DNA of 64,000 nucleotides, from the IMG/VR virus record IMGVR_UViG_3300043411_001777, positions 62,001 through 126,000 of that record; one strand, 5' to 3'. Under the pieces are notes generated by a model. That model was not told the origin of the DNA and searched no databases. It was given only the letters and a program-made list of their open reading frames with translations. A program made the translations under genes and the position numbers. Shown here piece after piece: positions 7,125 through 59,400 of the stretch. The first letter of the stretch is position 1. Each line of letters opens with the position of its first letter.

Positions 7125-7126
7125 AA

Positions 7127-9660: not shown

Positions 9661-9965
9661 CCAATGATATCCCAAACGGGTATTTCCGACAGGATATGAC
9701 TGCTCCTAGCATTGGGGGCATAGACCCAGTTCTTCTTGCTCATTTCGCGTACTTCTTTGCTAGAGCAACAAAACGCCTCGCAACCGCCACTGTTCCCCAA
9801 GAACTTCAAGAAGCGGATTCCTCCGCAAGTTTCCACGGGCGAAGACTACGCTCAATCCTCGGAAAGCTTCCGAATGATGACTTACTTGAAAGATGGGCGC
9901 TAGCCGGCGAGCAGATTCACAAGATTTGCACCCAAATCAGAAACGACCGAAAGGACAACAAATGA
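9657..9965 (+). CDS. hypothetical protein, paralog B
   Basis: ATGA overlaps on both sides; paralog of the previous gene. Confidence 0.75.
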   Translation: MTNDIPNGYFRQDMTAPSIGGIDPVLLAHFAYFFARATKRLATATVPQELQEADSSASFHGRRLRSILGKLPNDDLLERWALAGEQIHKICTQIRNDRKDNK

Positions 9966-38827: not shown

Positions 38828-41800
38828 TTAGGCCCCTTCTGCTTTAAGTGCTTGGAGAATCGAAGGGTGGAACTTCCAACCTGGGTTCCACCCTTCAAGG
38901 ACAGCACCCGTAGAGTCTAATAACCGTAGCTCGCACGTTCCCGCCACATTCTTATGCCACCGATGAAGAAGATCACTCAAATGCTGAGCATTGGAGGGAG
39001 ACAGACTAATACGCAGCTTATATTCCAGAATACTAGAATCGGCCTGGGGCGGACTGGACTGAGGCTGACTGGGCTGCGCAGTAGCTCCCTCTATCACAGG
39101 GGCCATTACGCCCAGAGGGGCCTTTAGCATTTCTTCTGTCCACTGGATATGCTCCCCATACGGAGACTGCGCAAAGGCCTCCAAAGTCTGGAGTTTGAAT
39201 AGTGGTGCCAATGCCTCCGGGAAACGGGGAAGCTGCTCCCAATTCAGGCCCGCTTTAGCAGCCGCGTCAGGGTTCTTGATCTTCTTGTTTCCGACGTAAC
39301 GAACCTCACCAGAACGCATGGAATCCAAATTCCAAGGAACCGACCAATCCTTACCGATTTCAACGTCCGAAGTGAGCGGGACGGGCCACTTCCGACCTTT
39401 AATGAAGTCGTTATTGATCATGATGAGACGGATGGTCTCAATCGCCTCTTCAAGGATTGAGCCGTGGATCCGGAAGACCAATTCGTCGTGCATGGTGATG
39501 AACATCTTGACCTTGTCCAACCACCCCTTCTTCTTCACCATTCGGTAAATAAGAGCCATTGCGATTTTGGTAATGTCCGCCGAAAGACCCTGCACGGGTC
39601 CGTTAATCGAGTTTCGTTCGGATTTGGAGCGAAAGAACCCGTCGGGGCTATTGATATCCGGAAGGCTCAGTTTCCGACCGAAAGCGGTAAACACAAAGCC
39701 ATTCTTGTGGGCGAAACTCTTCTGTGCCTCCCACCACCGAGCGAGGCCAGGATATTGCTTATCGAAGGTCGTCTTAATGCGATAGCCTTCGTTCTTATCG
39801 CCACCAACTGCACGCTGTGCAGCGCTCCCTCCGCCGCCATAAACCATAGCAAAATTAAGCTGTTTGGCCTTCTGACGCAGGAACTTCCAATCCGGCTTTT
39901 GCGCGGAGTTTTCGCCATACACCGACAATGCCGTCAGCGTGTGGAGGTCACCGATCTTATCGGAGCCGCACTTCGGACAACGAGGCGGAGGTGTCTTAGG
40001 CGTACCCTGGGTGAAATCACATTCGAATTTGAACTCGCAAGCACTGCAACGGAAATACTCAGCCAGCCATTTAGGCTCGCGGGACAGATTCGTGACAATG
40101 CGAAGCTCGACGCCCGAGTAATCGCAATTGAAGCTGAACAAATGTCCAGCTAGCGCGAAATTATGACTTCCATCGACGGTAGCGCAAAACACTTTTTCCA
40201 CACGATCAGTCGGCTCCACGGACTTAACAACCCAATAAGCCCTTTCTGAGCCCGTCCCGCCGCAATCTGGGCACTCGTCCTGCCAGACGTTGCCTTCCCC
40301 GTCGCACCGGTCTATTCCGACCCCGAGCCCGCCGCACCCGTGGCACTGGCCACCACCTTCCTCCGGGCCAACGTATATCGAGCGCATTCTAGCCCCCGGC
40401 CTTAACTCCCGGGTGGTAACTTCTACGTAGGTTTTACCTGAGTAATCCCAAACCGACCATCTATGCTCGGCAGTTGCCGATACAACTTTCTCGGACCCTC
40501 TTTGGGTAAAGATGATCTTTTGTAGGGGTTGCACCCCAAAACACCAAATTGGTGCGTCTACCCAAGTTCCGACCCCATTCTTATTTGTCAATAAACGTTG
40601 CGTGGTTCCAGCCAAACCCCCAATCTGTTTGATTCCATCTGCCGTAATAATCTCGGTCTCAGCCGCAAAGCAATTATGAACCACCAAACCGTTAGCTTGG
40701 AAGTTGTTCCCGTCAGGAACGGTCAGATCCCAAACCGCGGCCTCACCGTCGGAGCACACCGATTCCAACTCATCTGTAAACGTCCGACCCCACGACTTGT
40801 CCTTTGGAAGCCGGTTTCCAGTGAGCATCAGAAGCTTCTCTTGATTTCGGGCCTCCGAAAAACCAATCCGATCGGTGAACCGGATGATGTCTGCACTGTC
40901 CTCAATCCTCAGATGGTCATTCGAGCGGACAGAACGAACACCTTGCTTTAGAAGCAGAACCTGCAACTCCTGAGCAACAGGCCCACCTATCAGCAAGTCA
41001 ATGTGGTCAGTAACCTTGGCGTCCAACTCGAAAACACCGCGAAGGAATGAGGCTTGAACCCCAACCGAAGAAAGCCAAACTTCCTCGGGAATGGAATTCG
41101 GTACGTCCCCCCACTTTTTAGTGAAGTCCTGCACCCAACGAGCAAATTGATTCCCCCAGAATCGGAACTCACCGTCTCCTAGGTACTTCTCCTTGAAGCT
41201 CACCCCGAATAGAAACTGGGACCAATCATTGGTGGTCCTCATGTAATCAACACCGCCCAACGAACCGAACTTGAAGCCCACAGAAACAGGGAGCTTGCCC
41301 TTGGACTCCACAAAGCCGGACCCGAACACGCGCCCAAGAAACTCAGCAACCAACTCGTCAAAGTGAGCCGGCACCCTTGCGGCCGTACGGCTCTGTCCAA
41401 GCGATTCTGCGAGCGGAGGCAGGGCGACATAGGGCTGGGCCGTGTACGCGTCTACAGCCGCAAGAACACACCGATCTCCGGGCCGTAGCTTGCCAGCCTC
41501 AACCCACGTCCTCCCCGTGTCGCGCTCAACACGCATAAGATGGTCGGACGTGACCCGTAGTTCATAGCCAGAGCGGGTCCGGACCCGAACCACGGGCTTA
41601 GTGCCATTATAGGTGACCGCACTTACCGGCTTCCAGCCATTTTCGGTCAGAACCAAATCCCCAATGGCCACATCACGAATCCGAAGGTCCCCTCGGGACG
41701 TTGGGATTCGTGCATTTTCATCCACGCAAGCAACTACGAACTCATCCTCTTCCGCTACGATTGTCTCACGCAATCGTGTCATACATTCTGGCCGGGAGGT

Positions 41801-43243
41801 GTCATAGGATGCGGGAATGGCCTGGAGGTTAAGCGCGGGGATACCCTGTTTCCCGGAGCCCTCGCCTGCCGGGGTGGCAAACCGACCCGTGTCAACCTTA
41901 TGTCCGTTGAAGCTGATCTTCATGGATCCGTCGATCGGGTCCGCGTCCTCAGCCATAGGATACAAATAGGTTGACAGTGCCTTTTGCACTTCCCGGAATT
42001 TCTTCACCTTCCCCATGAAAGGGAATTGCTCACTGGCTTCCGTGACTACACGGTCCAATTCGTCTTTGGAGGTCTTAACCTGCTCAGACTTTTCTGTATA
42101 ACGTAGCCCGGGAACCTCTAGCTCCTCAAAAAGGTGCCCCAACTGTTGGGGGGAGGAGATATCGTAAACGTAGGGGTAAGTGACTTCCCCTTTCGGGGTG
42201 GCTTTTGTGATGAGAATGGACGGGTCAACATCCCGTACGGACTTAGCCTTAGCTAAGTCAATCCAACTCGATATCCGCTTCGTTGCATCTTGTGGGTCAA
42301 ACAGCTCAAACAGCTTGCGATAGAAACTAGGGGTACAGTCTCGCCCCAGAAGCTCTGTAGCTCCGGCATACACTTCTTGGATTGCAGCAAGCCATTCAAC
42401 ATGGCCGAGCCTGATTAGCTCCTGGGTCTTATTCAGATCACGAAGAATTCGGCACCGCTCCATCCACCGTGTGGAGGTAACACAGGACTTCTCAATGGCG
42501 TAGATAGCGGCTTGGTCAGCCTGCACTTTCGGCAGGAACTTCTCACATAGCAGGTAAGTGAAAATACCGTCACCGCCGCCATACCAAAGGACAGCCTCAT
42601 CCCTTGGGTCAAGCAAGGCAAAATTAAGGTCTTTCGTCCCTTCGGGGAACAGCTCGTCAAGTTCGATCTGATCGAACCCCAACTCCTTGAAAGTTAGCTT
42701 CTTGAGCTTCTTTTCCTTCTGGTGGGCGTCCGTTAGATACACCAGAATCAAGGAATCTTCCCACGACTTGTGGGAGTCGAAATTCCAATCCAGGCCCGGG
42801 ATGCCTGTAAACTCCAAGAACTCCTGGTCAAACTTGCCATAATGGAACAGGGCAACATGACTGCCTTCCATAAAAGCGGCCATTAGCCTGCCAAATTCCT
42901 TCGTCCAAAGGCTTTGGGGGATATTGGCAGAAGCAATCTCTTCGTCCACCTTCCCTAGCTTCTCGTCGATACCGTGAGAAATTGGAAGGTAGTAGCCATT
43001 GACCCCGTCGGGAGAGAGGCAGATACCTACAATTCGGTCGACGGTCTTCCCGTTGAAAACCCGGTTATCTAGGCCGGTGGTTTCAAGGTCAACGGCAATG
43101 CGTTTGGTAGGGGACGCAAGACACGTATCAATAGCCGCCGTAATGTTGTCTGGCGTAACAAGGTGGAATTTGAAGTTGCTTAACCAATCCCGCTTACGGA
43201 CTTGGATTTTGGAGTTTTCCTCAAGGAAGTCAAAAAAGCTCAT
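38828..43243 (-). CDS. polA: family A DNA polymerase with 3'-5' exonuclease, two inteins and a Zn-ribbon insertion
   Basis: VDLETTG (ExoI), KFD, VDTGRF, LQAIP, CDYSGVELR (motif A), KAKQLNFAMVYG (B), MHDEL (C); AGGAG SD before ATG 43243. Confidence 0.96.
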   Translation of the reverse strand: MSFFDFLEENSKIQVRKRDWLSNFKFHLVTPDNITAAIDTCLASPTKRIAVDLETTGLDNRVFNGKTVDRIVGICLSPDGVNGYYLPISHGIDEKLGKVDEEIASANIPQSLWTKEFGRLMAAFMEGSHVALFHYGKFDQEFLEFTGIPGLDWNFDSHKSWEDSLILVYLTDAHQKEKKLKKLTFKELGFDQIELDELFPEGTKDLNFALLDPRDEAVLWYGGGDGIFTYLLCEKFLPKVQADQAAIYAIEKSCVTSTRWMERCRILRDLNKTQELIRLGHVEWLAAIQEVYAGATELLGRDCTPSFYRKLFELFDPQDATKRISSWIDLAKAKSVRDVDPSILITKATPKGEVTYPYVYDISSPQQLGHLFEELEVPGLRYTEKSEQVKTSKDELDRVVTEASEQFPFMGKVKKFREVQKALSTYLYPMAEDADPIDGSMKISFNGHKVDTGRFATPAGEGSGKQGIPALNLQAIPASYDTSRPECMTRLRETIVAEEDEFVVACVDENARIPTSRGDLRIRDVAIGDLVLTENGWKPVSAVTYNGTKPVVRVRTRSGYELRVTSDHLMRVERDTGRTWVEAGKLRPGDRCVLAAVDAYTAQPYVALPPLAESLGQSRTAARVPAHFDELVAEFLGRVFGSGFVESKGKLPVSVGFKFGSLGGVDYMRTTNDWSQFLFGVSFKEKYLGDGEFRFWGNQFARWVQDFTKKWGDVPNSIPEEVWLSSVGVQASFLRGVFELDAKVTDHIDLLIGGPVAQELQVLLLKQGVRSVRSNDHLRIEDSADIIRFTDRIGFSEARNQEKLLMLTGNRLPKDKSWGRTFTDELESVCSDGEAAVWDLTVPDGNNFQANGLVVHNCFAAETEIITADGIKQIGGLAGTTQRLLTNKNGVGTWVDAPIWCFGVQPLQKIIFTQRGSEKVVSATAEHRWSVWDYSGKTYVEVTTRELRPGARMRSIYVGPEEGGGQCHGCGGLGVGIDRCDGEGNVWQDECPDCGGTGSERAYWVVKSVEPTDRVEKVFCATVDGSHNFALAGHLFSFNCDYSGVELRIVTNLSREPKWLAEYFRCSACEFKFECDFTQGTPKTPPPRCPKCGSDKIGDLHTLTALSVYGENSAQKPDWKFLRQKAKQLNFAMVYGGGGSAAQRAVGGDKNEGYRIKTTFDKQYPGLARWWEAQKSFAHKNGFVFTAFGRKLSLPDINSPDGFFRSKSERNSINGPVQGLSADITKIAMALIYRMVKKKGWLDKVKMFITMHDELVFRIHGSILEEAIETIRLIMINNDFIKGRKWPVPLTSDVEIGKDWSVPWNLDSMRSGEVRYVGNKKIKNPDAAAKAGLNWEQLPRFPEALAPLFKLQTLEAFAQSPYGEHIQWTEEMLKAPLGVMAPVIEGATAQPSQPQSSPPQADSSILEYKLRISLSPSNAQHLSDLLHRWHKNVAGTCELRLLDSTGAVLEGWNPGWKFHPSILQALKAEGA
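40127..40672 (-). mobile_element. intein 2 (182-aa mini-intein) containing a CxxCxGxG zinc finger
   Basis: CFAAETEIITADG...ATAEHRW...VFCATVDGSHNF...FSFN followed by CDYSG. Confidence 0.92.
40673..41728 (-). mobile_element. intein 1 (352 aa) with a LAGLIDADG-like endonuclease region
   Basis: CVDENARI...VTSDH (block B)...EFLGRVFGSG / FLRGVFELDA...VWDLTV...NGLVVHN followed by C. Confidence 0.95.
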
Positions 43244-43688
43244 CAGGTCTCCTAGACAGGGAAAATTCCCCCCCGTCCGCAACTAGAACATACCGATTCT
43301 CACGCCACGCGAGGATCACCTGATTGGCGGCCCACAGGAATTCCTCTTCTAGCGGTGCCTGGTAACAAAGAGGCACTTTCTTATGCGGATAGCAGCTATT
43401 GTCTGCCAACACACACCTTTTGATCAACCCACAATGCATCCCGGTGACTTTAGCCAAACGATATTTGGGCTCGGGACCTATTTCGCGAAATAAGGGCAAA
43501 GAATCCCCATGCAGCGCTTTCGACAGAGATTCTCCGCTCACAATAGGGATCAGAGGTCGGAGAATGGTGTCTCTAAGACAATCCAATTTTCCCCAAGCAT
43601 TCTCACCTATAGGAGTGGGCCGCAATATCAAAACGGGGGTGCACGTATGCGGGTGCAACACCTGAAAACGTCTAAGCCCGTCACTCAC
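43230..43688 (-). CDS. hypothetical protein
   Basis: overlaps both neighbours in the replication module. Confidence 0.7.
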   Translation of the reverse strand: MSDGLRRFQVLHPHTCTPVLILRPTPIGENAWGKLDCLRDTILRPLIPIVSGESLSKALHGDSLPLFREIGPEPKYRLAKVTGMHCGLIKRCVLADNSCYPHKKVPLCYQAPLEEEFLWAANQVILAWRENRYVLVADGGEFSLSRRPDELF

Positions 43689-44268
43689 TTGCTACCCACC
43701 CGACCTTGTTCATCACTTTCAGCCGCAATCCCGCCAAACGTTCAGCCGCCGCTTCCGGGGTAAATTCCTGCTCATGTAGTAGGAAATGAATTCGATCCAC
43801 TTCCTCCCACAGCAAAAACGAGGCCTCCATTTTCAGGATCCGGTCCTCGGTTATGCCTTTAAGGAGTGACATTAGACGCTGCCTCTCCTGCTCATAGGGA
43901 GAGACTTTTTTCTCTACGGGTGTAGTTGTGGGGTTCCAGTCTTCCTGGATTGGAACCTTGATATGGTACTTACGCTCAAGGAGCGTGAGCGCTTCGATGA
44001 AGGTCTTGCGCTCCTTTTCTTGGACAGTCTCGATTACATCGCGACCTTTCACACACGCGAAGCAATACCAAGTGTTACTCTCCGGATAGACACGCGCGGA
44101 GGGCTTTGTGTCTCGCCCGTCACCGTGCAAATCACACTGGAACTGCTGTTCACGATGCCCAGCGTCAGACCGAACCCGGTACCCGTAAGCCTCTAGGATC
44201 TCAAGTATAGATACGGCTTCTTTTACGGCCGCGATGCGGTGTTTTAGGTGGTCGGACATATGAGCCAA
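43681..44268 (-). CDS. CHC2 zinc-finger (primase Zn-binding domain) protein with no recognisable TOPRIM
   Basis: FQCDLHG...KPSARVY...WYCFAC...DVI. Confidence 0.85.
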   Translation of the reverse strand: MAHMSDHLKHRIAAVKEAVSILEILEAYGYRVRSDAGHREQQFQCDLHGDGRDTKPSARVYPESNTWYCFACVKGRDVIETVQEKERKTFIEALTLLERKYHIKVPIQEDWNPTTTPVEKKVSPYEQERQRLMSLLKGITEDRILKMEASFLLWEEVDRIHFLLHEQEFTPEAAAERLAGLRLKVMNKVGWVASE

Positions 44269-49553: not shown

Positions 49554-52500
49554 TTACGAATCTGTATCCAGCACCGTACCAGTTCGTACGGTCTCAGGAT
49601 AATTGATCAAATCAATTGCAGCCGGATTACGTACCCGACGTGAATTGGTTTTGATCATTGGCCGACCATTTATTCGGAAGCGATCTGCTGCTGCATACCC
49701 CTCCCCGTATCCTGTAGGAGATATAGTCCCGTTAATGGTCAACCCGTTAAGAGCCGTATCCTCATTCCCAAATACAGCATTTGTCAGGATAACCATTTGC
49801 AGCTCATCTCCGTCAGAAACCTTAAACGGCCCCGACAAAGCCTCTTCGTAGAAGTTGCGGACAAGCAATGCCTTGCAGGCCAAAAGACCGCCCTTTAGAA
49901 CAGGACGAGAGGCGGCAGGGAAGGACCCGGAAACCCAATCCACGGGACCCCCTGGAGTTGTCCCCGACAACACAAAGGCCGACCCACCACCCCGGTGGAG
50001 ACGGAATTTCTTGGTTTTCAGCGGATTATCCGTTTCATGGTAGCCCTCGAAATCCGTGGTGCAAATGAACCCGTCACTCATAGCGATTAGCTCACCGGCT
50101 GCACCAGTAAATCGGGTGGCCTCGTCCCCTTCCCCTGTTAGGGGGAGTAGCGACTGCACGGGGCTGATGTTGGAGACCATAGACCGAAGCGCCGAAGTCT
50201 TATCCCCCAGAGGATTCTCGCACAAGAAATCGCTATCCTGAACCAGGGCCCCCAACGGCAAACGCTCTGTCAGACCTGTGAGCTTTAGCTGTGTGGTTCC
50301 GTTGCCAGCATTTAACGGGAGGTCTACACCACCAGACAGATATACAAAGGTCCGGGTGGCACCGACAACCTCAGCGTTGTTAGGTGCCGAAGATAGCTGC
50401 CATACATCCTCAACAGGACCACAAGGAATTTCAGAAACCATCCCGTTGAACTTCGTGAAGTCCTCCGGACCAATCTCAACCCCAATCCCATTGCCCTCCG
50501 CACCAGTAGGAACTGCCTGGAGAATAAGGTCACTTGACCCACGCGAATGGATCGCCGTAACCGTTTCTTTCAAGAGCGGGTGAGCATTGATACAAGCTGC
50601 CATATTTGCCAACGTGACAGACGGATCTGGTCGCGTAGTAATGGCAGTGAGCGTGAGGTCCACCGTGCCGGGTGTGATTGTCCAATTAGCAATCGCCGGG
50701 GGCGAAAACACTACAATTTTAGCAGTTGCAAAAGCACCTGGGGCAACAGCCACACCTGTATGGTTATCGCACCACACGCGAACGGTGTTTAGCAGACATT
50801 CTGCTCGGAACACAAATCCGGCTGGTGGGGTGCTTGGAATTGCCACCAACGCAGCCATGGAGGTTGTTACCCCGGTTACTGTAACATCATACGAATCGGT
50901 GAACCCATCCGCGATCACATCTGGGAAATCAATAGCGGCCGTAAAAACACTAGCCCCATCAAACTCCCCATCAGGCAGCACTTCGAAAGCTGTCGGGTTG
51001 GCATTGTAGATGAGCGTCACAGTGACTTCATCATCATCCGTTACCTCAGCATAGAAAGTAGCGGTTCCCTTATCGTTTTCAAACTTGTCCGTTACGAACA
51101 CTTCTGTCCGGATATCCCCATCCGCAGAGGCACGACGAACACCTGGGAATGCAATCACAGCCGAATCACGCGGAGCCAGCATGGTCACAGGATCAAATGC
51201 CTGTGAAACCTCCAACTGTAGCATTTCAACCTTAGAGGTCTGATCTACAATGAAGACACCGTTTTCGCTTACCCCTTCTGCAAGAAGGTCAGACTCCCAT
51301 AGAGCCGCAGTTCCGTACAGAGGAACCGTCTCACCATTCAGCTTATGGATGGTCACCGGATAGTAGTTTCCGTTGATGTTTTCGACGATTAGCTCGTCCG
51401 CATCCAAAAGTGTTAGCTTTGCACTGGCCCGAGAAGGGTTCGTCTTCTGGCCCTCGGAGAACGCCCGTGGCAGGACCCGCCAATTTGGTGCATCCACGGC
51501 AGACGGACGGCGGACCGCAGCATTAGCGCTGTTTTCGGTGTACCCGATATCCAGCGGAGTGCCGGGATAGAGAGATCCACCGATCTTGCCAGTTCCCAGC
51601 GTGGTGCTGAAATCTAAGGACGCCAGCACCTGGAACGCACGGGTGTTAGCCGTTTGCGGCACGAAACCAGAGGAGTCATACTGCTGAACAGGCGTTGCCA
51701 ACGCAAACTGGTCACTGATCGAAATATGGCCGTAACGGACCGTATAGTCAGTCATAGCCCGAGTTGCCCCATTACGAGTGCCGAACGGATCCCCCTGATA
51801 TACCGGGCGGTTATAGCAGACGTACAGGTCCTCATTCAGTGCGGCTGCACTGGGAAGAACCATCCCGACGCCTTCCAGCTCAGTATTGGCGCCGTCAACA
51901 ACGGTTGCCCCGGCCCCCGTGTGACGGCGCGCAAGAACGAAGTTGTTCTTGTTGATCCATCCCTTGGAGAAAACGAAAACAACAGCCTCAACCACGTACT
52001 CAAAGTCCTCAAACTCATCCCCAGCCACATAACCAGGAATCCGAGTTAGGTCCAAAACATTGGACGGGATGATATACGTGTGGTCATGGTCCTGAGTCGT
52101 CAAGTCCTTAGCCCCGTCTTGGAAAATGAACAGGGTCTGTCTGTCCGCATCCTGACGTAGCAAATTGGTTGCCGGGTCGGCTTCCACTTCCCAACGATTT
52201 GAAAGGAAGGTACGACCACCCTTAGCCTCGTAATCAGCCCGCTCGAAAACGCCTTGAAGACGCGCGATACCGATATGGGGTGGGAGCTGAATTCCCCTTA
52301 GACCACGGCCAAGGTCGGAGGAATTTACCGCTGCAAGCCGGTCGATAATGTCCTGTGCATAGGGATCTGCATCATTGATGTCCGCAGGAACCTTTCGCGC
52401 ACCGTAAAAGGGTTTGTTGAGCACAGTCCCGATAGTTGTGGAGCTGTCCCCGTAATCAGACCCAACCTCATTAGTAACAAAGAAAAGCGGCTTAACCGAA

Positions 52501-55500
52501 GTCCCCGCAGTGACGTTGTCCTCCCCACCAATGATGTTGAACACTGGCGAGGTAAGCGTGAGGTTGTCTAGGAACAGGTGGTTGATGCCCGGCAGGAACG
52601 TCGCCGCTCCCGTATCGTCATCAAAGTACGGGATATCCTGCCGACCAAACCGAGGCATGTATTCCTGAGGAATTGGGTAGCCCATCTTCTGCCCAGCGGT
52701 AGCCAAATTCAACGAATCTTTCGTTGTAGCATCCGGATATGTCATATCCCCGATTAGCGTCTTGCTCCCAGTCATAGGGGCAAGGCCTGTAAACGTCATC
52801 GCCTTTAGCGTCATTGACTGAGCGCGGAAAGGCCGGAACAGAAGGGTCTTTGACCCCTTGTCAATAAAGGCTTCAGCTTCGCGGTCCTGCTCGGTAAAAC
52901 CGACCACAGCCCCACCGTAAGCGACGTCCGCGGGGGCAATGAACCCACGTGCTGGGAGCCGGTTCCATGTTTGGATGTGGGCCGAATCAAACATGATTTC
53001 ATCGTCCGGCATGCCCGAGGCCGCTTCAAACGTAGGATCTAGAACCCCAGGGGCCTGTCTAAGATAGGACGCCCCAGGGCTACGAAGCGCAATCCGGGAA
53101 ATGCCATCCGCCACCCGAGCTTCTGCCCCACGCCCCGGGAAGTATTGGAGTGTGAGGCTGAGAAGCATCTTATCGGCAAAGATGCTTGAGACCGCTACGC
53201 GGTAACTAGCATCCGCCTCATTCATGTTGTATGTGGCCCACGGATAATCCGTAGCATCCGCATCCGTCACACCCGAACCGTAAAGAGCCCCGCCCACGTC
53301 TGTTAGAACAATGGCAAGGTCACCGATACGGGAAGCGTAATCCGAAATGTCGTCGGCATCATGTTCTTGAGAACGGAACTCGACCGTAACCGAGTTTCCT
53401 GTGCCCGTGTCAAACGGGCCTGTATACGGAGCTACCGAAAGGGGCTGCACCACAATGCTCGTAGCGTTGCTGGCATTTACATGCGTATACCCCGCAGTCC
53501 CACAGCCCAGCACCTTAAAAGCTCCGTTGTTGTAGTTGCTGTCAGCATCCCCCCACAACAGAACATAAACCCCGGATGAATTACCCGTGCGATCCAGGCC
53601 GTTGTTGGTCAACATCCCGTAAAGGGTCTTACGGCCGTTCTTGAGAGGCTCCCCTAGGTTACCAGGCTCATTCTCAAACTGCCCATTAGCATCCAAAGAG
53701 AAATAGGTGTCCTCTACATCGAAATCAATCCCAAGGTCGATTTCATAAACGCCATCGGTCGTTACCAAGTTGGTAGCTGCAAGCCCTTCCACGCGAAGTG
53801 TATCATTTAGCAAACCACCAAGCACGAGAAACGGGTGCTCGAAATTAGCTCCGCGCCAAGGGTACATCGGACCGGAATGGTTCTCCGGATTCAAAACATC
53901 AACAGGGGGCGCCTCCAAACCTCGTGATCCCTGGAAACGTAGCGTAATCGGCGTTTGGTTACCGGTCTCATCCGTTGGGGTATGCGTTTTCCAGGCCTCA
54001 GCCGGAGTCAAGAATCGAACAGCACGCGTTGCACCATCACGGAACGTCCCGCGAGCACCCCCATTACCATCCGCCCCACCAATGAACAATTGGATGTGAG
54101 ACCCGTTAACCCAGCTATCAGCAGGAATTCCTGAGGTGTTTTGGAAACCAATCGGCTTGAACCCAGGAGCTACATCCCACTCAACCAAAGTGTCAAACTG
54201 AGAGGAGTCCCCAAACCCAACCCCCCCATCAATCTTTGTGGCCTCGTGGTCCAAAAGAAGGGTTACGTTAGGCTGAATCACCGCCGCATCCGACCAGATG
54301 GTCCGAACCCCGTCCGGACCATCCAAAGCCTCGGTCATATTTGGAACGGCTGTCCCTCCGTCCGCCAGCAAATAGCCCACTTCGCTTACAACAGGGCCCT
54401 GGCTATTGCCAGACCCTGAGGTCTTCCATGCCGTGCGAAGGTTACCTGAGAGCAACGCTTGCACGTTGTGCTCTAGAATACGCTTGTAGTCCCATTCCCC
54501 TTGAGTAACTGCACGCCTCAAATCCAACACGTCCCGCTCAGCGATTTGATCCGCGAACAGCCCATCCGGGTGAGACGTGAAGAACTTCACCACAGAACCC
54601 GCGGGATGACCCACAGCCGCCGTACCATAACGACCACGACCGGAGATTGTGAAAGTACCGCCCCCCGCGTTTACCGCAGACAGACCAACAATCTCATCGT
54701 CAATCATGAGGAAGGTGTTAGCCAACACCAAATCCCCATCCTCTAGACCCGAGCCGTTTAGTCCTGTAACGGTCACGGCCACAGCATCCGTCGTGTGTGT
54801 AATAGCCGCAGTAAGGGTGCCAGTTAGCAGCTCCCGAGCACCGTCAAGCGGGTCGGGGAGGCCCGCCGCACTGGGGTTACGATCAAATGCACCGTTGTGG
54901 TTTGGGTTACCCACAGCAACAGCCGTGAAAGCAGCGGTGTTGCGGCGGAATATCGCTGCAACAGGAATCGCGTAGGTATAGCCATCAATCGTGCCCAGCT
55001 CATTGTCCGGGTCACCATCTCCAGCACGCCAGAGCCCAGCGTCGCCGAGAACAGCACGCATATTGCTAAAGGTGAGGCCAGCGATCGGGTCTGCGGCCGT
55101 TCCCTGTCCGAGAACATCAGGGTCATCTAGACCATCTGGGTATACATCCAAAGCTACACCAGAGCTAGCGGTATTTCCCTGCCCAAAGGTGCGAAGACGG
55201 TACTGCACTTGAACCCGAGCGGCCGTCTCCTGGCCGATGTCCGAATCTTCCAGGTCGTCTGTAATGTTCGTCCCGCCATACAGCACATTTCCGTGCTTCC
55301 AAAGCGTCGAGGCACTCGGCTTATTCGCCGTGGAGGGGTTTGGGCGGATAAGGGCTGCCCAGGCCTCTAGGAACACAAGATCGATGCGGTAGGTGCTTGA
55401 GGGAGGCGGGTACAGCTTTACGACGTTCTCGTACTCACCTTCAGCCTCAACCCGTGTGCCCGTGACTGGGATGATCCAGCCATTGACATTCGCAACAACA

Positions 55501-55793
55501 ACCCCTTGCTCTTCCTCATCCTCTAGAGATCCAACCACATCCTTAGTGGGCCCAAGGACAAAGTAGTTGCTCCAATTCTCATCGAACTGGAAATCGTCCG
55601 TAGCCCGAGTCGGGTCCATAAAGAACCCAGAGGGCATTGCCGCCTGCACACCAGCCCTAAAGCGCTCCCAATCAGCTTGGCCGATAAGGTTGAGGTCCGC
55701 ATCTAGCGGAGGCTTACCCGCCTGCAAAACGACCAAGCCAAAGGATCTGGCCGTTGCACTTAGAGTGCGCGAAACTTTGTCGCCAAGATTCAT
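49554..55793 (-). CDS. very large virion structural protein (2079 aa)
   Basis: length, G/T/D/A-rich composition, position next to baseplate-like genes. Confidence 0.75.
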   Translation of the reverse strand: MNLGDKVSRTLSATARSFGLVVLQAGKPPLDADLNLIGQADWERFRAGVQAAMPSGFFMDPTRATDDFQFDENWSNYFVLGPTKDVVGSLEDEEEQGVVVANVNGWIIPVTGTRVEAEGEYENVVKLYPPPSSTYRIDLVFLEAWAALIRPNPSTANKPSASTLWKHGNVLYGGTNITDDLEDSDIGQETAARVQVQYRLRTFGQGNTASSGVALDVYPDGLDDPDVLGQGTAADPIAGLTFSNMRAVLGDAGLWRAGDGDPDNELGTIDGYTYAIPVAAIFRRNTAAFTAVAVGNPNHNGAFDRNPSAAGLPDPLDGARELLTGTLTAAITHTTDAVAVTVTGLNGSGLEDGDLVLANTFLMIDDEIVGLSAVNAGGGTFTISGRGRYGTAAVGHPAGSVVKFFTSHPDGLFADQIAERDVLDLRRAVTQGEWDYKRILEHNVQALLSGNLRTAWKTSGSGNSQGPVVSEVGYLLADGGTAVPNMTEALDGPDGVRTIWSDAAVIQPNVTLLLDHEATKIDGGVGFGDSSQFDTLVEWDVAPGFKPIGFQNTSGIPADSWVNGSHIQLFIGGADGNGGARGTFRDGATRAVRFLTPAEAWKTHTPTDETGNQTPITLRFQGSRGLEAPPVDVLNPENHSGPMYPWRGANFEHPFLVLGGLLNDTLRVEGLAATNLVTTDGVYEIDLGIDFDVEDTYFSLDANGQFENEPGNLGEPLKNGRKTLYGMLTNNGLDRTGNSSGVYVLLWGDADSNYNNGAFKVLGCGTAGYTHVNASNATSIVVQPLSVAPYTGPFDTGTGNSVTVEFRSQEHDADDISDYASRIGDLAIVLTDVGGALYGSGVTDADATDYPWATYNMNEADASYRVAVSSIFADKMLLSLTLQYFPGRGAEARVADGISRIALRSPGASYLRQAPGVLDPTFEAASGMPDDEIMFDSAHIQTWNRLPARGFIAPADVAYGGAVVGFTEQDREAEAFIDKGSKTLLFRPFRAQSMTLKAMTFTGLAPMTGSKTLIGDMTYPDATTKDSLNLATAGQKMGYPIPQEYMPRFGRQDIPYFDDDTGAATFLPGINHLFLDNLTLTSPVFNIIGGEDNVTAGTSVKPLFFVTNEVGSDYGDSSTTIGTVLNKPFYGARKVPADINDADPYAQDIIDRLAAVNSSDLGRGLRGIQLPPHIGIARLQGVFERADYEAKGGRTFLSNRWEVEADPATNLLRQDADRQTLFIFQDGAKDLTTQDHDHTYIIPSNVLDLTRIPGYVAGDEFEDFEYVVEAVVFVFSKGWINKNNFVLARRHTGAGATVVDGANTELEGVGMVLPSAAALNEDLYVCYNRPVYQGDPFGTRNGATRAMTDYTVRYGHISISDQFALATPVQQYDSSGFVPQTANTRAFQVLASLDFSTTLGTGKIGGSLYPGTPLDIGYTENSANAAVRRPSAVDAPNWRVLPRAFSEGQKTNPSRASAKLTLLDADELIVENINGNYYPVTIHKLNGETVPLYGTAALWESDLLAEGVSENGVFIVDQTSKVEMLQLEVSQAFDPVTMLAPRDSAVIAFPGVRRASADGDIRTEVFVTDKFENDKGTATFYAEVTDDDEVTVTLIYNANPTAFEVLPDGEFDGASVFTAAIDFPDVIADGFTDSYDVTVTGVTTSMAALVAIPSTPPAGFVFRAECLLNTVRVWCDNHTGVAVAPGAFATAKIVVFSPPAIANWTITPGTVDLTLTAITTRPDPSVTLANMAACINAHPLLKETVTAIHSRGSSDLILQAVPTGAEGNGIGVEIGPEDFTKFNGMVSEIPCGPVEDVWQLSSAPNNAEVVGATRTFVYLSGGVDLPLNAGNGTTQLKLTGLTERLPLGALVQDSDFLCENPLGDKTSALRSMVSNISPVQSLLPLTGEGDEATRFTGAAGELIAMSDGFICTTDFEGYHETDNPLKTKKFRLHRGGGSAFVLSGTTPGGPVDWVSGSFPAASRPVLKGGLLACKALLVRNFYEEALSGPFKVSDGDELQMVILTNAVFGNEDTALNGLTINGTISPTGYGEGYAAADRFRINGRPMIKTNSRRVRNPAAIDLINYPETVRTGTVLDTDS

Positions 55794-55869: not shown

Positions 55870-56499
55870 TCAGTGCGTAAGCCGCCAGGTGATCGACATA
55901 ACGAAATTGTTCGGCTTGTTTATCACTGGGAATGTCAAGTAATTGACCAGGATGTCATATGAGGACACATCAATAGTGTCGTCATAATCCCCAGGGCCGT
56001 TCGTATTCGGGTTCAGAACTAGCGGGTTAGAAGAAATTGGGCAGATAATGCCCATTTCATTTAACGCTCCAACGGCTTCTGACGCCGCAAAGGTTGTCAC
56101 ATAATCGACAATGTTGGTCGGATAAGCTACTGCATTCCCAAGAGAATCCCGGTATTGGGTACTTGCAAAAGCCTTACGGGCCAGCTCACTTTCAAGTGCC
56201 CGCTGCTCATTAGTTGCAGCTCCTAAAGAGCCTGTCCCAACCGCCAACATTGCGGGACCGTTGTGTAATCCAACGTTTGGTACAGTTGAGTTTTTCCACA
56301 ATCGGGCCGTCATGATCCCGGCATCCAAGGTCACAACGTTGAGTTTATCCAGCACAACTTCCGATTGACCCGTAGGATCAATCAGTTCTATGAGAACACG
56401 CCCAACTAAAGACGGGGCCCTGTCCAAAAACAACCCCTGCGCGCTCATGCCCCAGGCATCCCTCGGAGCCTTAATGTGTTCTTTTCTCATATCACCCAA
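55870..56499 (-). CDS. baseplate/tail-associated protein
   Basis: AVGTGS...ALESELARK...FAASEAVGALNEMG pattern typical of tail fibre/baseplate N-termini. Confidence 0.7.
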   Translation of the reverse strand: MGDMRKEHIKAPRDAWGMSAQGLFLDRAPSLVGRVLIELIDPTGQSEVVLDKLNVVTLDAGIMTARLWKNSTVPNVGLHNGPAMLAVGTGSLGAATNEQRALESELARKAFASTQYRDSLGNAVAYPTNIVDYVTTFAASEAVGALNEMGIICPISSNPLVLNPNTNGPGDYDDTIDVSSYDILVNYLTFPVINKPNNFVMSITWRLTH

Positions 56500-59400
56500 C
56501 TAGGTTATGTGTTGCTTGGACCACATCAAACTCATCCGTAAGGATGACTTCAACATCTCCGTTGGACAGGTCCCACCCGTCCATGATACCCGACTCCGTG
56601 AAGAGATCCCCAGAAAACTCAATAACTAGGCCAGCAGATTCCTGCAAAGGCACTCCGTCACAGGCAATAGCCAACAGATTGTTATCCCCGTCGTTATCTA
56701 TCGTGAAGTGCTCGGCCTCTTCCAGATAGGTGCCTTCCGGGTCTGTATACGTCAAGAAGTCACGAGCTAAAGCCCCACCCGTGGAATCCTCCCCCTTCAC
56801 GGCTTTTCCGACTTGGCTTAACACAAAGGGAGGTGTCCCTTCGTTCAACAGAGTTGCCGAATCCCAAAAGGGCTCTGCCCTCAAATAAGTTTCCGTCGGG
56901 ACGGACGCGGAGTAAACCACTGTCACCAGTGGGTTCGCAAACTCTTCCTCAAACTTAAGGGTCAGAATTTGAGAGCGGGCGTCAAAGTCCCAGCTTTCCT
57001 GAGTCCAAATGGTACTGCCGTCAACCACTTTGAAAACCGATTTGGCATATACCTGTGTCGGTCTTAGGTTAACGGAATTACCCCCAGTGACTTCTAGAAT
57101 GACAGACTCGGGGGTGGTATCCTTACCCAGCTCTCCGCTATGAATGACATTGAACCGGTTGAGCACCATAGGGTGCGAGAGACTACGGCTATCCGAAGGG
57201 TGGTTGAAAATGCGGTAACGCACATAATCCCACAACTGCTCGGTAATAGCCTCAGCGTTCAAAGACCCAAAGGAAATCTTTCCCACCAACGAGGTGGCTC
57301 GCGGCAATTGCTTGTATTCGACGTTGATCCAACCTGCGCTAGGCTCCACGGTTTCCGTCAAGAACCCCGAACCCGCAGAGCCACTCTCCGCTACATAGTA
57401 AGGGGGTGCTGCCAAATCCGGCCTAATGACCGTCACACCCCATTCCGGGTCACGCAAGACGCGAACCTCAGTGGTGGCGGTCCAATCCATTTCCTCGATC
57501 GCAGGGCCTACCTGAGCCGAATTCAACGCAGAGGAACTATCGGATCTCGGCAACTCCCAAGAGTCAATATCCCACTCATCCGTCCCACGCAATACGCCCA
57601 AGGTCCGTTTAGCAGACGCCGAAGGGATAGCTACAGCAGTCACCGCCCGCCATAGAATGGTTGCGGTGTCCTCAGCATCCCCTGGCAAATCTGGAAAGAC
57701 GCCCCAAGCGAAACTGGTGTTGTTTCCCGCAACAACAAAATCCGTGTAATCCTGAGTAAGGAGCTGCACCTCACCATCAATGGTTAGGGTAACGGAACCT
57801 TCCGCAATAGCCGTGACTCGATAGATATGCTCAACCCCGTCATTCCAATCGAAGGTATAAGCAACTACAGCCGCCCCATCGGAAACCAAATAGACATAAG
57901 GCACCTCTGCAACAACCGCCAACCTAACAATAACCTCACGCTCCGAAGCCGATCCGAAATTGCCTCCGAAGGAGATTGGAGGGCTTCCCACCAAATTGAC
58001 AACCGTAATGGCAGCTTCAAAGATTCGAGAACCCGAATCAAAACCCGCCATTTCGGTTAGGTCTAACTCAGAAGAGTAGTACCCATAACCATTATTGGTT
58101 TCTGGATTAAGGGACCAACCAGTCTGAAAAAAGGCTTGATTGCGAACTTCTGTCAGAACGACCTGTGTGTCTATATCCCAGCCTTGCTCCTCAGGTGTTG
58201 AAAACCCGATGAAGGAAAGCTGTGCGGGCTTCAAAAGCCGACGATAGGGTGCCGAATACCCCTCTGCATAAAGCAAAGTAGCTAAGAGAATCTTACGCTT
58301 GCCATCGTCAATTAGCAGGGAAGCATCCCCAACGCCTCGGGAACCACTTGTGACACTGAGGTCTGCCTGCAAATCAAGGATAGCCTTGGACGTGAGAAAC
58401 GGCTCATACCTGGAGTAGGTGGCATAAACCCCACTGTGCGCCCCCAAATCTTTGAGGGTCAACACGCTACTGGCTACTGCCCCGCTATTAGACACGCCTT
58501 CTCGGAACCACGGCTCTTCGTTGTCTTCGGGGAGGGCTGTCATTTCGGTCTGAACGAGCACACCCTCTTTCAGCTCCGTTCCCAGGTACGGGACAACCCC
58601 CGCGCGATAAAAGCTCCAAGTAGTCTGGTTCGTCGCAGTACGGCTGAAAGACCCGAAGAAGGTTGCCCCTGTTCCTGTAAGAGGGAGCACCAGAGGTAAT
58701 TCCGAAGGAGGTGGGATCCGTACGCTTGAAGCACTAAGGCTTAGTGATCCCCGAGTATCCCCACTCACCGTGAGTGTGCAAGACGACTCTGCGGTATCGA
58801 CTTCCAAACGATAGGTAAACAGCGTCCGCCAATCTGTCTCAAAATAGACTGTGGGGTACTGCCCCCCAAAAGCTTTATAGCTAGCTGGGAAAACTTCCTC
58901 AATCACAATCGTGGTGTTGACGGCACCTCGGCTAAGGGAGCTTATCGTGTAAGTCCCGGCCTGAACCCCGTCCAAGATTTGGAATCGATCATTCTCTTGA
59001 AAGTCTAGCGGGATACTGGCATTTGGGATCTCAAACGAGGAAGCCGTCTTAATGGTTATCTGGCTGTTTGGTCCGATATTCCAAGAGGCCGTGAGGTCCG
59101 GACGTTCCGGGTTACTCAGCACCCCAACATGACGGACACCATTGATTTCCAAACAGCCGACAAAAAAGAGCTTGCGGTTTGTGTGGCAGCCGAAGCCAAC
59201 CCCAGTAAACACACCATCTAAGGTGTAGGCGTCAATCGTAAACCGGGATACGAAATATCCGGTGAAGGCATACGTGCTGTCAATCGACTGTGAGTAAACG
59301 GCACAACTGTTGCTGTCTTCCTCATATGGAGAGGACGATTCATCTAGCAGGTTGTAGGTCCCATCCGTGTTTGGACCACCCGTGTCTGTTCCGGACAACG

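What the first reader, a model, noticed from the sequence alone, without database searches (positions are those of the whole stretch)
40127..41728. Two inteins back-to-back at one site in the DNA polymerase
Seen: the extein ...EEDEFVVA is followed by intein 1 (CVDEN...VVHN, 41728-40673). Intein 2 (CFAAE...FSFN, 40672-40127) follows with no extein residue between them, and then comes CDYSGVELR (motif A). Removing both restores VVA-CDYSGVELR, a normal PolA motif A. Established: an intein needs a Cys/Ser/Thr at +1. Here the +1 nucleophile of intein 1 is Cys1 of intein 2. Inference: this is a stacked pair that must both splice, either in a fixed order or in either order since both junctions offer Cys, before the polymerase works. 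Standard homing would replace an occupant rather than stack next to it, so an unusual recombination event is implied. I do not know of many described cases.
Basis: partly seen in the sequence, partly recalled or inferred. Interest (0 to 1): 0.92.

Follow-up and report, generated by a model that had tools for sequence, protein, structure and literature searches.

The report
Two stacked inteins in phage polymerase
A jumbo-phage DNA polymerase gene carries two unrelated self-splicing protein elements (inteins) inserted head-to-tail at the same peptide bond, so one cysteine must serve both; I found no description of this arrangement, and it makes the order of splicing and the way inteins invade occupied sites testable.

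Summary
The family A polymerase gene (38828-43243, minus strand) is interrupted just before motif A by 534 codons. These are two complete inteins with no extein residue between them.

Intein 1 (41728-40673, 352 aa) is the ortholog of an intein at this same site in 16 related phage polymerases. Its LAGLIDADG homing endonuclease has decayed. Intein 2 (40672-40127, 182 aa) is a mini-intein from a different, very large family found in primases, ribonucleotide reductases and phage proteins. The AlphaFold2 model is a confident HINT fold. A DnaJ-type zinc module sits where the endonuclease normally is.

Removing both restores the motif A seen in about 100 intein-free homologs. Two assemblies give the identical gene. 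Extein catalytic motifs are intact, so both inteins presumably splice. Cys1 of intein 2 is also the +1 nucleophile of intein 1.

Pattern scans and the literature search found no other pair of unrelated stacked inteins. One phage lysin carries four back-to-back inteins, but those arose by duplication in place.

Splicing order, mechanism and origin remain inferences. I rate this a new variant of a known kind.

The parts
38828..43243 (-). Family A DNA polymerase gene (1471 codons from the ATG plus stop; the ORF extends to a TTG at 43282). It encodes a 164.4 kDa precursor and a predicted 105.6 kDa mature enzyme.
   Evidence: ORF list; Pfam DNA_pol_A 1.3e-57 and NCBIfam DNA polymerase I; identical protein P0001 on two contigs; masses.
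41729..43243 (-). N-extein (505 aa): 3'-5' exonuclease region and the N-terminal part of the polymerase domain, ending ...EEDEFVVA.
   Evidence: Aligns with residues 14-519 of the spliced reference in all homologs.
40673..41728 (-). Intein 1 (352 aa, 39.2 kDa), a canonical class 1 signature: Cys1 (41726-41728), block B VTSDH (41540-41554), block F VWDLTV with Asp at F:4 (40700-40735), block G NGLVVHN (40673-40693).
   Evidence: Pfam Intein_splicing 48.3 bits (cut-off 35.8); TIGR01445 and TIGR01443 above cut-off. End-to-end orthology with the site-a inteins of 16 homologs. Sequence matches to solved inteins 4o1r and Pho RadA.
41012..41350 (-). Decayed LAGLIDADG endonuclease core of intein 1. 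Motif 1 reads GSG where orthologs read GDG (41312-41350). Motif 2 reads FELDA where orthologs read FDADG (41012-41050). About 70 residues are deleted relative to orthologs, including most of the C-terminal segment.
   Evidence: Alignment with 16 orthologs. No LAGLIDADG_3 hit in intein 1, while every ortholog has one precomputed.
40670..40672 (-). Shared cysteine codon (TGC): residue 1 of intein 2 and at the same time the +1 residue of intein 1.
   Evidence: Junction ...GTT CAT AAT | TGC TTT GCG... read directly.
40127..40672 (-). Intein 2 (182 aa, 19.7 kDa), a mini-intein. It has Cys1, block B ATAEHRW (T67, H70, W72; 40457-40477), block F VFCATV with Cys163 at F:4 (40175-40192), and the end HLFSFN (Ser180, Phe181, Asn182; 40127-40144).
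   Evidence: 963 representatives at E<=1e-3 with coincident boundaries. Family invariants are C1, T6, T10, G13, G46, T67, H70, W72, L90, V161, C163, F172, L174 and N182. The AF2 model has pLDDT above 95 for residues 1-100 and 145-182. All of the top 50 Foldseek PDB hits are HINT-fold proteins (mostly inteins, plus BIL and hedgehog domains), probability 1.00, target-normalised TM 0.7-0.8 for the best-ranked mini-inteins.
40250..40345 (-). Two CXXCXGXG motifs (CHGCGGLG, CPDCGGTG), a DnaJ-type zinc-knuckle pair. They lie in the loop where relatives carry the LAGLIDADG endonuclease.
   Evidence: Weak Pfam DnaJ_CXXCXGXG match. Position shown in alignment A2. Absent from the inteins of all 260-odd relatives in hand. 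Low AF2 confidence because the alignment has no coverage there.
38831..40126 (-). C-extein (432 aa). It starts with Cys+1 (40124-40126) and motif A DYSGVELR (40100-40123), and contains motif B (RQKAKQLNFAMVYGG) and motif C (HDE).
   Evidence: Translation; Pfam DNA_pol_A stretch 1049-1314.
39950..40054 (-). CxxC...CxxC zinc ribbon inside the extein between motifs A and B. It is a clade marker of this polymerase family, not part of either intein.
   Evidence: Weak Pfam Zn_ribbon_8 and TIGR02605 matches; present in 116 of 117 homologs.

Best explanation
The polymerase gene of this roughly 206 kb phage carries two genuine, unrelated inteins stacked head-to-tail at the single peptide bond Ala|Cys in front of the catalytic Asp of motif A. 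Intein 1 is the site-specific resident of this polymerase clade, and its homing endonuclease has decayed. Intein 2 is a mini member of a promiscuous intein family. That family has Cys1, Trp at B:12, Cys at F:4, Thr at G:5 and a Gly-Asn end. Its endonuclease slot holds a small zinc module instead. The precursor (164 kDa) must lose both inteins to yield an active 106 kDa polymerase. The Asn352-Cys bond between the inteins is the C-terminal scissile bond of intein 1 and also the N-terminal scissile bond of intein 2. The thiol of that Cys is both the +1 acceptor of intein 1 and the residue-1 nucleophile of intein 2. The two reactions therefore compete for one residue and should run one after the other. 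Either order gives an ordinary single-intein precursor. If intein 2 goes first, intein 1 regains its native flanks VVA|...|CDY. If intein 1 goes first, intein 2 gets Ala at -1, a residue that also occurs in its family. The most likely origin is that intein 2 was inserted secondarily at the downstream Asn|Cys junction of the resident intein 1. Shown here: architecture, family membership, fold, boundaries, intact catalytic residues, endonuclease decay, rarity. Inferred: that both splice, the order, and the origin.
For: Coordinates and frame are confirmed. Intein 1 is orthologous, end to end, to the site-a intein of 16 homologs. The extein tree puts the query at the base of an 18-tip clade in which 14 carry that intein, against 3 of 102 outside it. 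Cys at +1 occurs in 17/17 intein-bearing alleles and 3/102 empty ones, p = 7e-18. Intein 2 belongs to a family with 963 representatives, and its boundaries coincide with theirs. All 14 family-invariant residues are present. The HINT fold is supported by AF2 and Foldseek. The two inteins are not paralogs. Extein motifs A, B, C and Exo I are intact, and 182 + 352 codons are free of stops. The same 6416 nt come from a JGI contig and a Logan contig, and the gene lies inside both contigs. No repeat at the junctions could mislead an assembler. GC3 of both inteins falls within the genome's range. Asn at -1 is the commonest flank among the family's distinct insertion sites (27 of 114), and Cys at +1 occurs in 262 of 265. 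Zero-spacer stacking exists elsewhere: P0163 carries four inteins, and that exact protein is on five contigs.
Against: No experiment shows splicing. Intein 2 departs from its family at two nearly invariant positions next to the scissile Asn (Thr180 to Ser, Gly181 to Phe). It scores below Pfam's gathering cut-off (25 vs 35.8 bits). Only one genome carries the pair, and the two contigs may derive from the same library. No allele with intein 1 only or intein 2 only at high extein identity was found, so the order of arrival is not documented. The ML tree does not tie intein 2 to any donor site. I could not obtain a trustworthy model of the two domains sharing one peptide bond, so steric feasibility with both folded is untested.
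Confidence: 0.8

Rival explanations
1. Assembly chimera: the population holds two alleles, one with intein 1 and one with intein 2, and the assembler threaded them in series.
For: Only one genome shows the pair. The gene's protein cluster has a single member.
Against: A graph bubble between two alleles cannot produce a series join without repeating extein sequence, and none is repeated. The junctions share only AAT|TGC. The whole gene has no repeat longer than 24 nt at 79% identity. The join is in frame and exact at both intein boundaries. Two assemblies made with different pipelines are identical over 6416 nt. No single-intein allele of this gene exists among 5.8 billion clustered proteins.
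Confidence: 0.03
2. One of the two elements no longer splices. Then the gene is a decaying pseudogene, or the insert stays in the protein, or cleavage products are made instead of ligated polymerase.
For: Intein 2 has Ser-Phe where its family has Thr-Gly before the terminal Asn. Both endonucleases are lost or decayed, so neither element is young. Each intein faces non-native flanks while the other is still in place.
Against: Every residue invariant in each family is kept: C1, T/H of block B, Asp or Cys at F:4, terminal Asn, Cys+1. The 4.4 kb frame is open, and all polymerase and exonuclease motifs are intact. No second replicative polymerase was seen in the 64 kb window. The penultimate residue is variable in phage inteins, and mutating Thr G:5 has been reported to have a minimal effect (PMC5050341, PMC5222942).
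Confidence: 0.08
3. The pair behaves as one composite intein. The thioester made at the N-terminus of intein 1 is captured by the C-extein Cys next to intein 2, and the two inteins leave together as a 58.9 kDa piece.
For: With no spacer, the two active sites must lie face to face around the shared Asn-Cys bond. That would bring all four reactive groups close together (inference from HINT geometry).
Against: Each HINT domain has its own complete set of catalytic blocks. The two families evolved to act alone. No precedent was found.
Confidence: 0.04
4. Alternative origin: intein 2 was there first, or both single-intein alleles existed. The stack then arose when intein 1 was placed upstream by illegitimate recombination between co-infecting phages, using microhomology at TGC or AAT|TGC, rather than by intein 2 invading the junction of a resident intein 1.
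For: Both junctions carry the same AAT|TGC hexamer. Neither intein has a working endonuclease today. The tree does not identify a donor for intein 2.
Against: Intein 1 is the clade's long-term resident: 14 of 18 tips in the query's clade. Intein 2 occurs in no other polymerase of the family. An intein 1-type endonuclease would find only 5 of 15 downstream bases of its target in an intein 2-occupied allele (sequence comparison).
Confidence: 0.3

Closest known systems
[quoted passage not shown]
   Same: More than one intein in one essential replication protein, and all must splice. Neighbouring inteins affect each other's homing.
   Different: In those cases the inteins sit at different peptide bonds with extein sequence between them, and each has its own extein +1 nucleophile. 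Here there is one bond, no spacer and one shared Cys.
Four-intein zero-spacer array in a phage CHAP/lysozyme protein (P0163; L030:6124-9672), found here
   Same: Back-to-back inteins with no extein residue between them. Each upstream intein uses the Cys1 of the next as its +1. The downstream partner belongs to the same large family as intein 2.
   Different: The four copies are monophyletic (support 0.988) and about 34% identical, so they arose by duplication in place. All keep a LAGLIDADG domain. The window's pair joins two unrelated lineages.
Class 3 inteins (mycobacteriophage Bethlehem DnaB, Msm DnaB-1, Mch DnaB-1; PMC2807308, PMC5222942, PMC7664689)
   Same: The intein 2 family has Trp at B:12, Cys at F:4 and Thr at G:5, the class 3 triad. 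Mch and Msm DnaB-1 structures are among the Foldseek hits.
   Different: Cys1 is invariant in the intein 2 family, whereas class 3 inteins lack or do not need an N-terminal nucleophile. The +1 residue is Cys, which PMC5222942 reports for only one class 3 intein. The query has Ser at G:5. There is no detectable sequence match to class 3 structures.
Cyanobacterial DnaE/DnaB-type class 1 mini-inteins (Npu DnaE 4kl5, Ssp DnaB 6frg)
   Same: They are the best structural and profile matches to intein 2. The block order is the same, and the N-terminal motif C[LF]xxxTEI.T is similar.
   Different: They have Asp at F:4 and Phe at B:12 where the intein 2 family has Cys and Trp. They end in Ser-Asn or His-Asn, and they carry no zinc module.
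Twintrons: introns inserted into or next to other introns and removed in a fixed order (from my own knowledge of Euglena chloroplast group II/III twintrons; not checked here)
   Same: One selfish splicing element lands on another. Host gene expression requires sequential removal.
   Different: That is RNA-level splicing. Here two protein-level autocatalytic domains share a scissile bond and a nucleophile.
Engineered two-intein schemes (tandem trans-splicing for three-segment ligation, PMC12707363)
   Same: Two orthogonal inteins act on one polypeptide assembly.
   Different: Those are designed and separated by an extein segment, and each intein has its own flanking residues.

Membership tests
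Intein (HINT splicing domain), intein 1 | N-terminal Cys/Ser/Thr at position 1 | tested here: met
   Cys at 41726-41728. It aligns with Cys1 of 16 orthologs.
Intein (HINT splicing domain), intein 1 | Block B Thr-x-x-His, block F, and block G ending His-Asn | tested here: met
   VTSDH, VWDLTV and NGLVVHN. Pfam Intein_splicing is above the gathering score, as are TIGR01445 and TIGR01443.
Intein (HINT splicing domain), intein 1 | Cys/Ser/Thr at +1 | tested here: met
   The +1 residue is Cys, and it is residue 1 of intein 2 rather than an extein residue.
Intein (HINT splicing domain), intein 1 | Insertion at a conserved site of a host protein, with intein-free alleles that are colinear across the site | tested here: met
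   About 100 intein-free homologs are continuous across VA-[I/C]-D[YF].
LAGLIDADG homing endonuclease (within intein 1) | Two LAGLIDADG motifs, each ending in a catalytic acidic residue, plus an intact DNA-binding scaffold | tested here: not met
   Motif 1 is GSG instead of GDG and motif 2 is FELDA instead of FDADG. About 70 residues are deleted. There is no PF14528 hit.
Intein (HINT splicing domain), intein 2 | Cys1, block B Thr/His, terminal Asn, Cys+1 | tested here: met
   C1, T67, H70 and N182, followed by Cys of CDYSG. All are invariant in a 91-sequence family alignment.
Intein (HINT splicing domain), intein 2 | HINT fold | tested here: met
   AF2 mean pLDDT 84 (above 95 outside the zinc loop), pTM 0.78. 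Top 50 Foldseek PDB hits are all inteins, BIL or hedgehog HINT domains.
Intein (HINT splicing domain), intein 2 | Curated profile score (Pfam Intein_splicing gathering cut-off) | tested here: not met
   25.0 bits against a 35.8-bit cut-off; TIGR01445 and TIGR01443 are also below cut-off. This reflects poor coverage of this family by the curated models: only 5 of 10 clear family members match at E<=0.01.
Intein (HINT splicing domain), intein 2 | Penultimate His (block G:6) | tested here: not met
   It is Phe in the query and Gly in at least 90% of the family. A non-His penultimate residue is documented in active phage inteins (PMC5050341).
Both inteins | Demonstrated protein splicing (excised intein plus ligated exteins) | not testable with these tools
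   This needs expression and western blot or mass spectrometry.
Class 3 intein, intein 2 and its family | Trp B:12, Cys F:4, Thr G:5 triad | tested here: inconclusive
   W72 and C163 are invariant. G:5 is Thr in at least 90% of the family but Ser in the query. Numbering was checked against the H-x-W spacing and the Cys-to-Asn distance given in PMC5222942.
Class 3 intein, intein 2 and its family | No requirement for an N-terminal nucleophile (residue 1 usually not Cys/Ser/Thr) | tested here: not met
   Cys1 is invariant in all 91 aligned members. Whether it is used cannot be told from sequence.
Bacterial intein-like (BIL) domain, considered for intein 2 | No +1 nucleophile; located in variable, non-conserved host proteins; mainly cleavage products | tested here: not met
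   Cys+1 occurs in 262 of 265 family members. Hosts are conserved replication enzymes such as DnaG and RNR.

The most novel reading that the evidence does not exclude
Resident inteins create landing sites for other inteins. Every intein that uses a Cys +1 presents an Asn|Cys junction at its 3' end. The intein 2 family (Cys1 plus the Trp/Cys/Thr triad, found at more than 100 distinct flank contexts in the sample, most often Asn at -1) is predisposed to home into such junctions. The result is 'twinteins', in which one Cys is the acceptor for one intein and the initiator for the next. If intein 2 starts with its block F Cys163, as class 3 inteins do, the shared Cys1 is left free for intein 1. The pair would then be a naturally ordered two-step splicing device, possibly gated by zinc or redox state through the CXXCXGXG module.
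Probability: 0.2. Interest if true: 0.85.

Novelty: new variant of a known kind. Interest (0 to 1): 0.72.

Why it matters
Homing theory treats an occupied site as immune, because the endonuclease target is destroyed. Textbook splicing chemistry assumes that the flanks of an intein are extein. Here the flank of each intein is the catalytic end of another intein. Occupied sites can therefore be re-invaded or extended, and a single cysteine has to take part in two splicing reactions.

This gives a natural test bed for three questions. How tolerant are inteins of structured flanks? Is splicing order imposed kinetically? Do inteins that combine Cys1 with the class 3 triad use the class 1 or the class 3 route?

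For protein engineers, a natural zero-spacer pair of orthogonal inteins is a ready template for sequential or logic-gated splicing. For genome annotators, the case shows that a long insert in a conserved enzyme should be checked for more than one intein.

Tried and rejected
1. AF2 model of the whole pair. Three MAFFT alignments (A3, A4, A5) aligned single inteins across the pair, N lobe to intein 1 and C lobe to intein 2 (checked). They would have pushed the model towards a false composite, so I did not submit them. The geometry of the shared bond is therefore untested.

2. More stacked inteins by DNA pattern. I searched for the back-translated junctions T-G-N|C-[FL]-[AS]-[AG]-[DE]-T...T and H-N|C-... 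in viral, metagenome and genome collections. All hits were single inteins at extein sites ending in TEN, THN or HN.

3. Donor site for intein 2. The relatives closest by identity (55-59% over the HINT lobes) sit at an HFxN|CD[FY]F site of proteins with weak or faint precomputed MJ0330_N matches. That site resembles VHN|CDYS. DNA identity is 9-10 of 15 downstream but only 3-4 of 15 upstream. Two ML trees do not place intein 2 inside that group. It remains a lead only.

4. Relatives of the P0163 lysin, looked for as an allelic series: none in IMG/VR.

5. Short-protein search with intein 2 alone: only 2 hits.

6. GenBank phages. There was no DNA match to the gene and no tblastn match to intein 2. 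The N-extein has one distant relative, the huge phage LR745208.1.

7. An 18-nt inverted repeat at the start of intein 1 (41674-41712) is not more stable than shuffles, z = -0.85.

8. Tandem duplication as the origin of the window's pair is rejected, because the two inteins share only block B similarity.

9. Filing intein 2 as a class 3 intein or as a BIL domain is rejected (see the membership tests).
Full report
**1. What is in the sequence.**
The minus strand holds one open frame, 38828..43282 (1484 codons from a TTG). The database version, P0001, starts at the ATG at 43243 and has 1471 residues. Pfam and NCBIfam identify a family A DNA polymerase whose polymerase domain is split.

- The N-extein ends ...EEDEFVVA at 41729.
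- CVDEN...VVHN fills 41728-40673 (352 aa).
- CFAAE...FSFN fills 40672-40127 (182 aa).
- CDYSGVELR follows from 40126.

At the DNA level the three junctions read GTTGCT|TGCGTG, CATAAT|TGCTTT and TTCAAT|TGCGAT.

**2. Context.**
The neighbours are a DnaG-type zinc-finger protein, a DnaB-like helicase and an SNF2 helicase. Further off are RtcB, a PurA-like enzyme, an amidase and several very large ORFs with no family match. The contig is 206,089 bp.

The only GenBank phage with a related N-extein is an uncultured 485 kb huge phage. Homologs lie on contigs of up to 536 kb. This is the replication module of a jumbo phage.

**3. The empty site.**
A search of 5.8 billion clustered proteins found 511 homologs, of which the best 120 were listed. 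About 100 of these have no insert at this position and read [IV]VA-I-D[YF][AS]G[VE]ELR.

Sixteen homologs carry one insert of about 422 aa at exactly this bond: VA|CV[AE]EG...VVHN|CD[FY]SGVELR. The residue before the motif A Asp is Cys in 17 of 17 intein-bearing alleles. In intein-free alleles it is Cys in 3 of 102 and Ile in 81 (p = 7e-18). Removing both elements from the window's gene therefore restores a normal motif A with the intein-associated Cys.

The family has two further intein sites, near spliced residues 606 and 698. One homolog has all three occupied.

**4. Intein 1.**
It scores above the curated cut-offs for Intein_splicing and for the intein N- and C-terminal models. It matches solved inteins by sequence. 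It aligns from Cys1 to His-Asn with all 16 site-a inteins at 28-35% identity, E down to 3e-46.

In an extein tree with the inserts removed, the query is the basal sister of a clade whose other 17 members include 13 with this intein. Only 3 of the other 102 sequences carry it. Intein 1 is therefore the long-term resident of this polymerase lineage.

Its endonuclease is decayed:
- Orthologs read ...GDG... and ...FDADG... at the two LAGLIDADG motifs; the query reads GSG and FELDA.
- About 70 residues are missing, including most of the C-terminal segment.
- Pfam finds no LAGLIDADG domain in it, although every ortholog has one on record.

**5. Intein 2.**
Curated models only brush it (25 bits). An exhaustive phmmer search against 1.84 billion representatives gave 963 hits at E<=1e-3 and 503 at <=1e-10.

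In each hit the match begins at a Cys that follows unrelated host sequence. It ends at Asn followed by Cys, usually with a 150-200 residue LAGLIDADG domain between the two lobes. Hosts include actinobacterial DnaG primases, class II ribonucleotide reductases and phage proteins.

A 91-sequence alignment gives these invariants: C1, T6, T10, G13, G46, T67, H70, W72, L90, V161, C163, F172, L174, N182. The query has all of them. It differs at two positions conserved in at least 90% of members: T180 is Ser and G181 is Phe.

AlphaFold2 with this alignment gives pLDDT above 95 for residues 1-100 and 145-182. All of the top 50 Foldseek hits in the PDB are HINT-fold proteins: mostly inteins, plus BIL and hedgehog domains. 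They include Ssp and Npu DnaB, Npu DnaE, Mtu RecA and the class 3 Mch and Msm DnaB-1 inteins. Probability is 1.00, and target-normalised TM is 0.7-0.8 for the best-ranked mini-inteins.

No solved structure is detectable from the single sequence. A family profile reaches Npu DnaE only at E 5e-4. That alignment places the family's Cys163 on the Asp of block F position 4.

The endonuclease slot holds two CXXCXGXG motifs, a DnaJ-type zinc knuckle. This module is not found in any of the 260-odd relatives in hand.

**6. The two inteins are not copies.**
Intein 1 and intein 2 share only a 50-residue block B similarity (E 0.004). The pair cannot be a tandem duplication.

**7. Is it an artefact?**
- The exact protein is encoded on two contigs: JGI Ga0451708_0000008 (206 kb) and a Logan assembly of SRR35185575 (58 kb). 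The gene lies well inside both, and the 6416 nt compared are identical. I cannot tell whether the two assemblies used the same library.
- No extein sequence is repeated between the inteins.
- The junctions share only AAT|TGC.
- The gene contains no repeat that could bridge alleles.
- GC3 of both inteins (0.60 and 0.54) lies inside the genome's 5-95% range of 0.46-0.66.

A chimera is very unlikely. Read mapping remains the formal test.

**8. How it most likely works.**
*Shown.* Both elements keep every family-invariant catalytic residue. The frame is open for 4.4 kb. The extein keeps Exo I and motifs A, B and C.

*Inferred.* Both must be excised for the polymerase to work. The Asn352-Cys bond is at once the bond that intein 1 breaks by Asn cyclisation and the bond that intein 2 converts to a thioester. 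The Cys thiol is at once intein 1's +1 acceptor and intein 2's first nucleophile. While that thiol carries the N-extein (intein 1's branched intermediate) it cannot start intein 2. While it holds the intein 1 carbonyl as a thioester it cannot accept the N-extein. The reactions are therefore mutually exclusive at any instant and should run in series.

Both orders end in an ordinary single-intein precursor:
- If intein 2 leaves first, intein 1 sees its native VVA|...|CDY flanks. During that step intein 2 sees Asn at -1, the commonest flank among its family's distinct sites (27 of 114).
- If intein 1 leaves first, for instance while intein 2 is still being translated, intein 2 then sees Ala at -1, which also occurs in its family.

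**9. A possible twist.**
The intein 2 family carries Trp at B:12, Cys at F:4 and Thr at G:5. This is the triad that defines class 3 inteins, in which the block F Cys makes the first attack (PMC2807308, PMC5222942, PMC7664689). Yet the family also keeps an invariant Cys1 and a Cys +1.

If Cys163 is the initiator, Cys1 would be free for intein 1. Changing the shared Cys to Ala would then leave an intein 2-first route open. This is testable, but sequence alone cannot decide it, so I do not file intein 2 as class 3.

**10. Origin.**
Standard homing needs an empty target, so a non-standard event is required.

I favour secondary insertion of intein 2 at the 3' junction of the resident intein 1, for three reasons:
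- Intein 1 is the clade's resident.
- Intein 2 occurs in no other polymerase of the family.
- Intein 2's family is promiscuous: 114 distinct (-1, +1 to +3) flank combinations in my sample, with Asn the most frequent -1 residue and Cys at +1 in 262 of 265. Any intein followed by a Cys +1 offers such an Asn|Cys junction.

The relatives closest by identity sit at HFxN|CD[FY]F, which resembles VHN|CDYS. However, DNA similarity is confined to about 11 nt, and the tree does not confirm that relationship.

The alternative is microhomology-mediated recombination between two single-intein alleles. It cannot be excluded. Both endonucleases are now gone or dead, so the arrangement is not recent.

**11. 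Rarity and precedent.**
No other stack was found in any of the following:
- 120 polymerase homologs;
- about 265 intein 2 relatives, apart from P0163 below;
- six back-translated junction scans of IMG/VR, JGI/ENA metagenome contigs and GTDB genomes (checked).

Four full-text searches of the held open-access library found no description of natural back-to-back inteins. The nearest paper concerns inteins at separate neighbouring sites (PMC10643990). Subscription journals are not covered.

One protein from the intein 2 search is a true second case. P0163 is a phage CHAP/lysozyme protein with four zero-spacer inteins at its catalytic Cys. That exact protein is on five contigs. Its four copies are monophyletic (support 0.988) and about 34% identical, which points to old duplication in place. 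It shows that stacked inteins are viable. The window's pair remains the only heterologous stack seen.

**12. Verdict.**
This is a new architectural variant of a known kind of element. It is of real interest to intein and homing-endonuclease specialists and is directly testable with a small set of mutants.

Noticed in passing
L030:6124-9672 (protein P0163, Logan ERR3199666, 62.5 kb phage-like contig): Four back-to-back inteins with no extein residue between them, at residues 42-349, 350-662, 663-918 and 919-1224 (the last ends in Gln). They are inserted at the catalytic Cys of a CHAP/lysozyme protein. The copies are monophyletic and about 34% identical. The exact protein is on five contigs.
   Followed up: partly
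window 40127-40672 and about 963 database representatives: The intein 2 family combines an invariant Cys1 with the class 3 triad (Trp B:12, Cys F:4, Thr G:5), a Gly-Asn end and Cys +1. It has no solved relative detectable by single-sequence search. It may be a mechanistically distinct or intermediate intein group.
   Followed up: partly
window 40250-40345: Two CXXCXGXG motifs (a DnaJ-type zinc knuckle, internally repeated 72 nt apart) occupy the endonuclease slot of intein 2. None of the 260-odd relatives in hand has them.
   Followed up: partly
window 39950-40054: A CxxC...CxxC zinc ribbon lies between motifs A and B of the polymerase. It is conserved in 116 of 117 homologs and so marks this huge-phage PolA clade.
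   Followed up: partly
homologs P0042, P0043, P0075, P0097 and others: The polymerase family has two more intein sites: K|C...HN|S near spliced residue 606 and QG|C...HN|TS near 698. P0075 (2194 aa) has all three sites occupied.
   Followed up: partly
homologs P0067, P0103, P0105: These are intein-free alleles that nevertheless have Cys before the motif A Asp. They are likely footprints of precise intein loss.
   Followed up: no
homolog P0043: A second site-a intein has decayed LAGLIDADG motifs, an independent case of endonuclease decay.
   Followed up: no
window 9893-11095: An adenylosuccinate synthetase-like gene in a phage. PurA models score 253 bits and the PurZ (aminoadenine pathway) model 101 bits; all are below their cut-offs.
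   Followed up: partly
window 7043-8353: An RtcB RNA ligase. Its best NCBIfam model is an 'intein-containing RtcB' family, but only the extein part matches, so this copy has no intein.
   Followed up: partly
window 11602-12354 and 15036-16013: A NADAR-domain protein with a weak match to an anti-phage NADAR model, and a 325-aa ORF with an N-terminal HicA-toxin-like domain.
   Followed up: no
window 49554-55793 and 56492-61171: ORFs of 2079 and 1559 residues on the minus strand with no Pfam match at E<=1e-3.
   Followed up: no
L033 (LR745208.1 284841-293433): The polymerase region of the 485 kb relative has no ORF of 300 aa or more under the standard bacterial code. The gene may use an alternative code or be interrupted there.
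   Followed up: no
L036 (contig of P0002): The gene order DnaG zinc-finger protein, 152-aa ORF, polymerase is the same as at window 43230-44268. This is a syntenic relative carrying intein 1 only, but at just about 46-51% extein identity.
   Followed up: no
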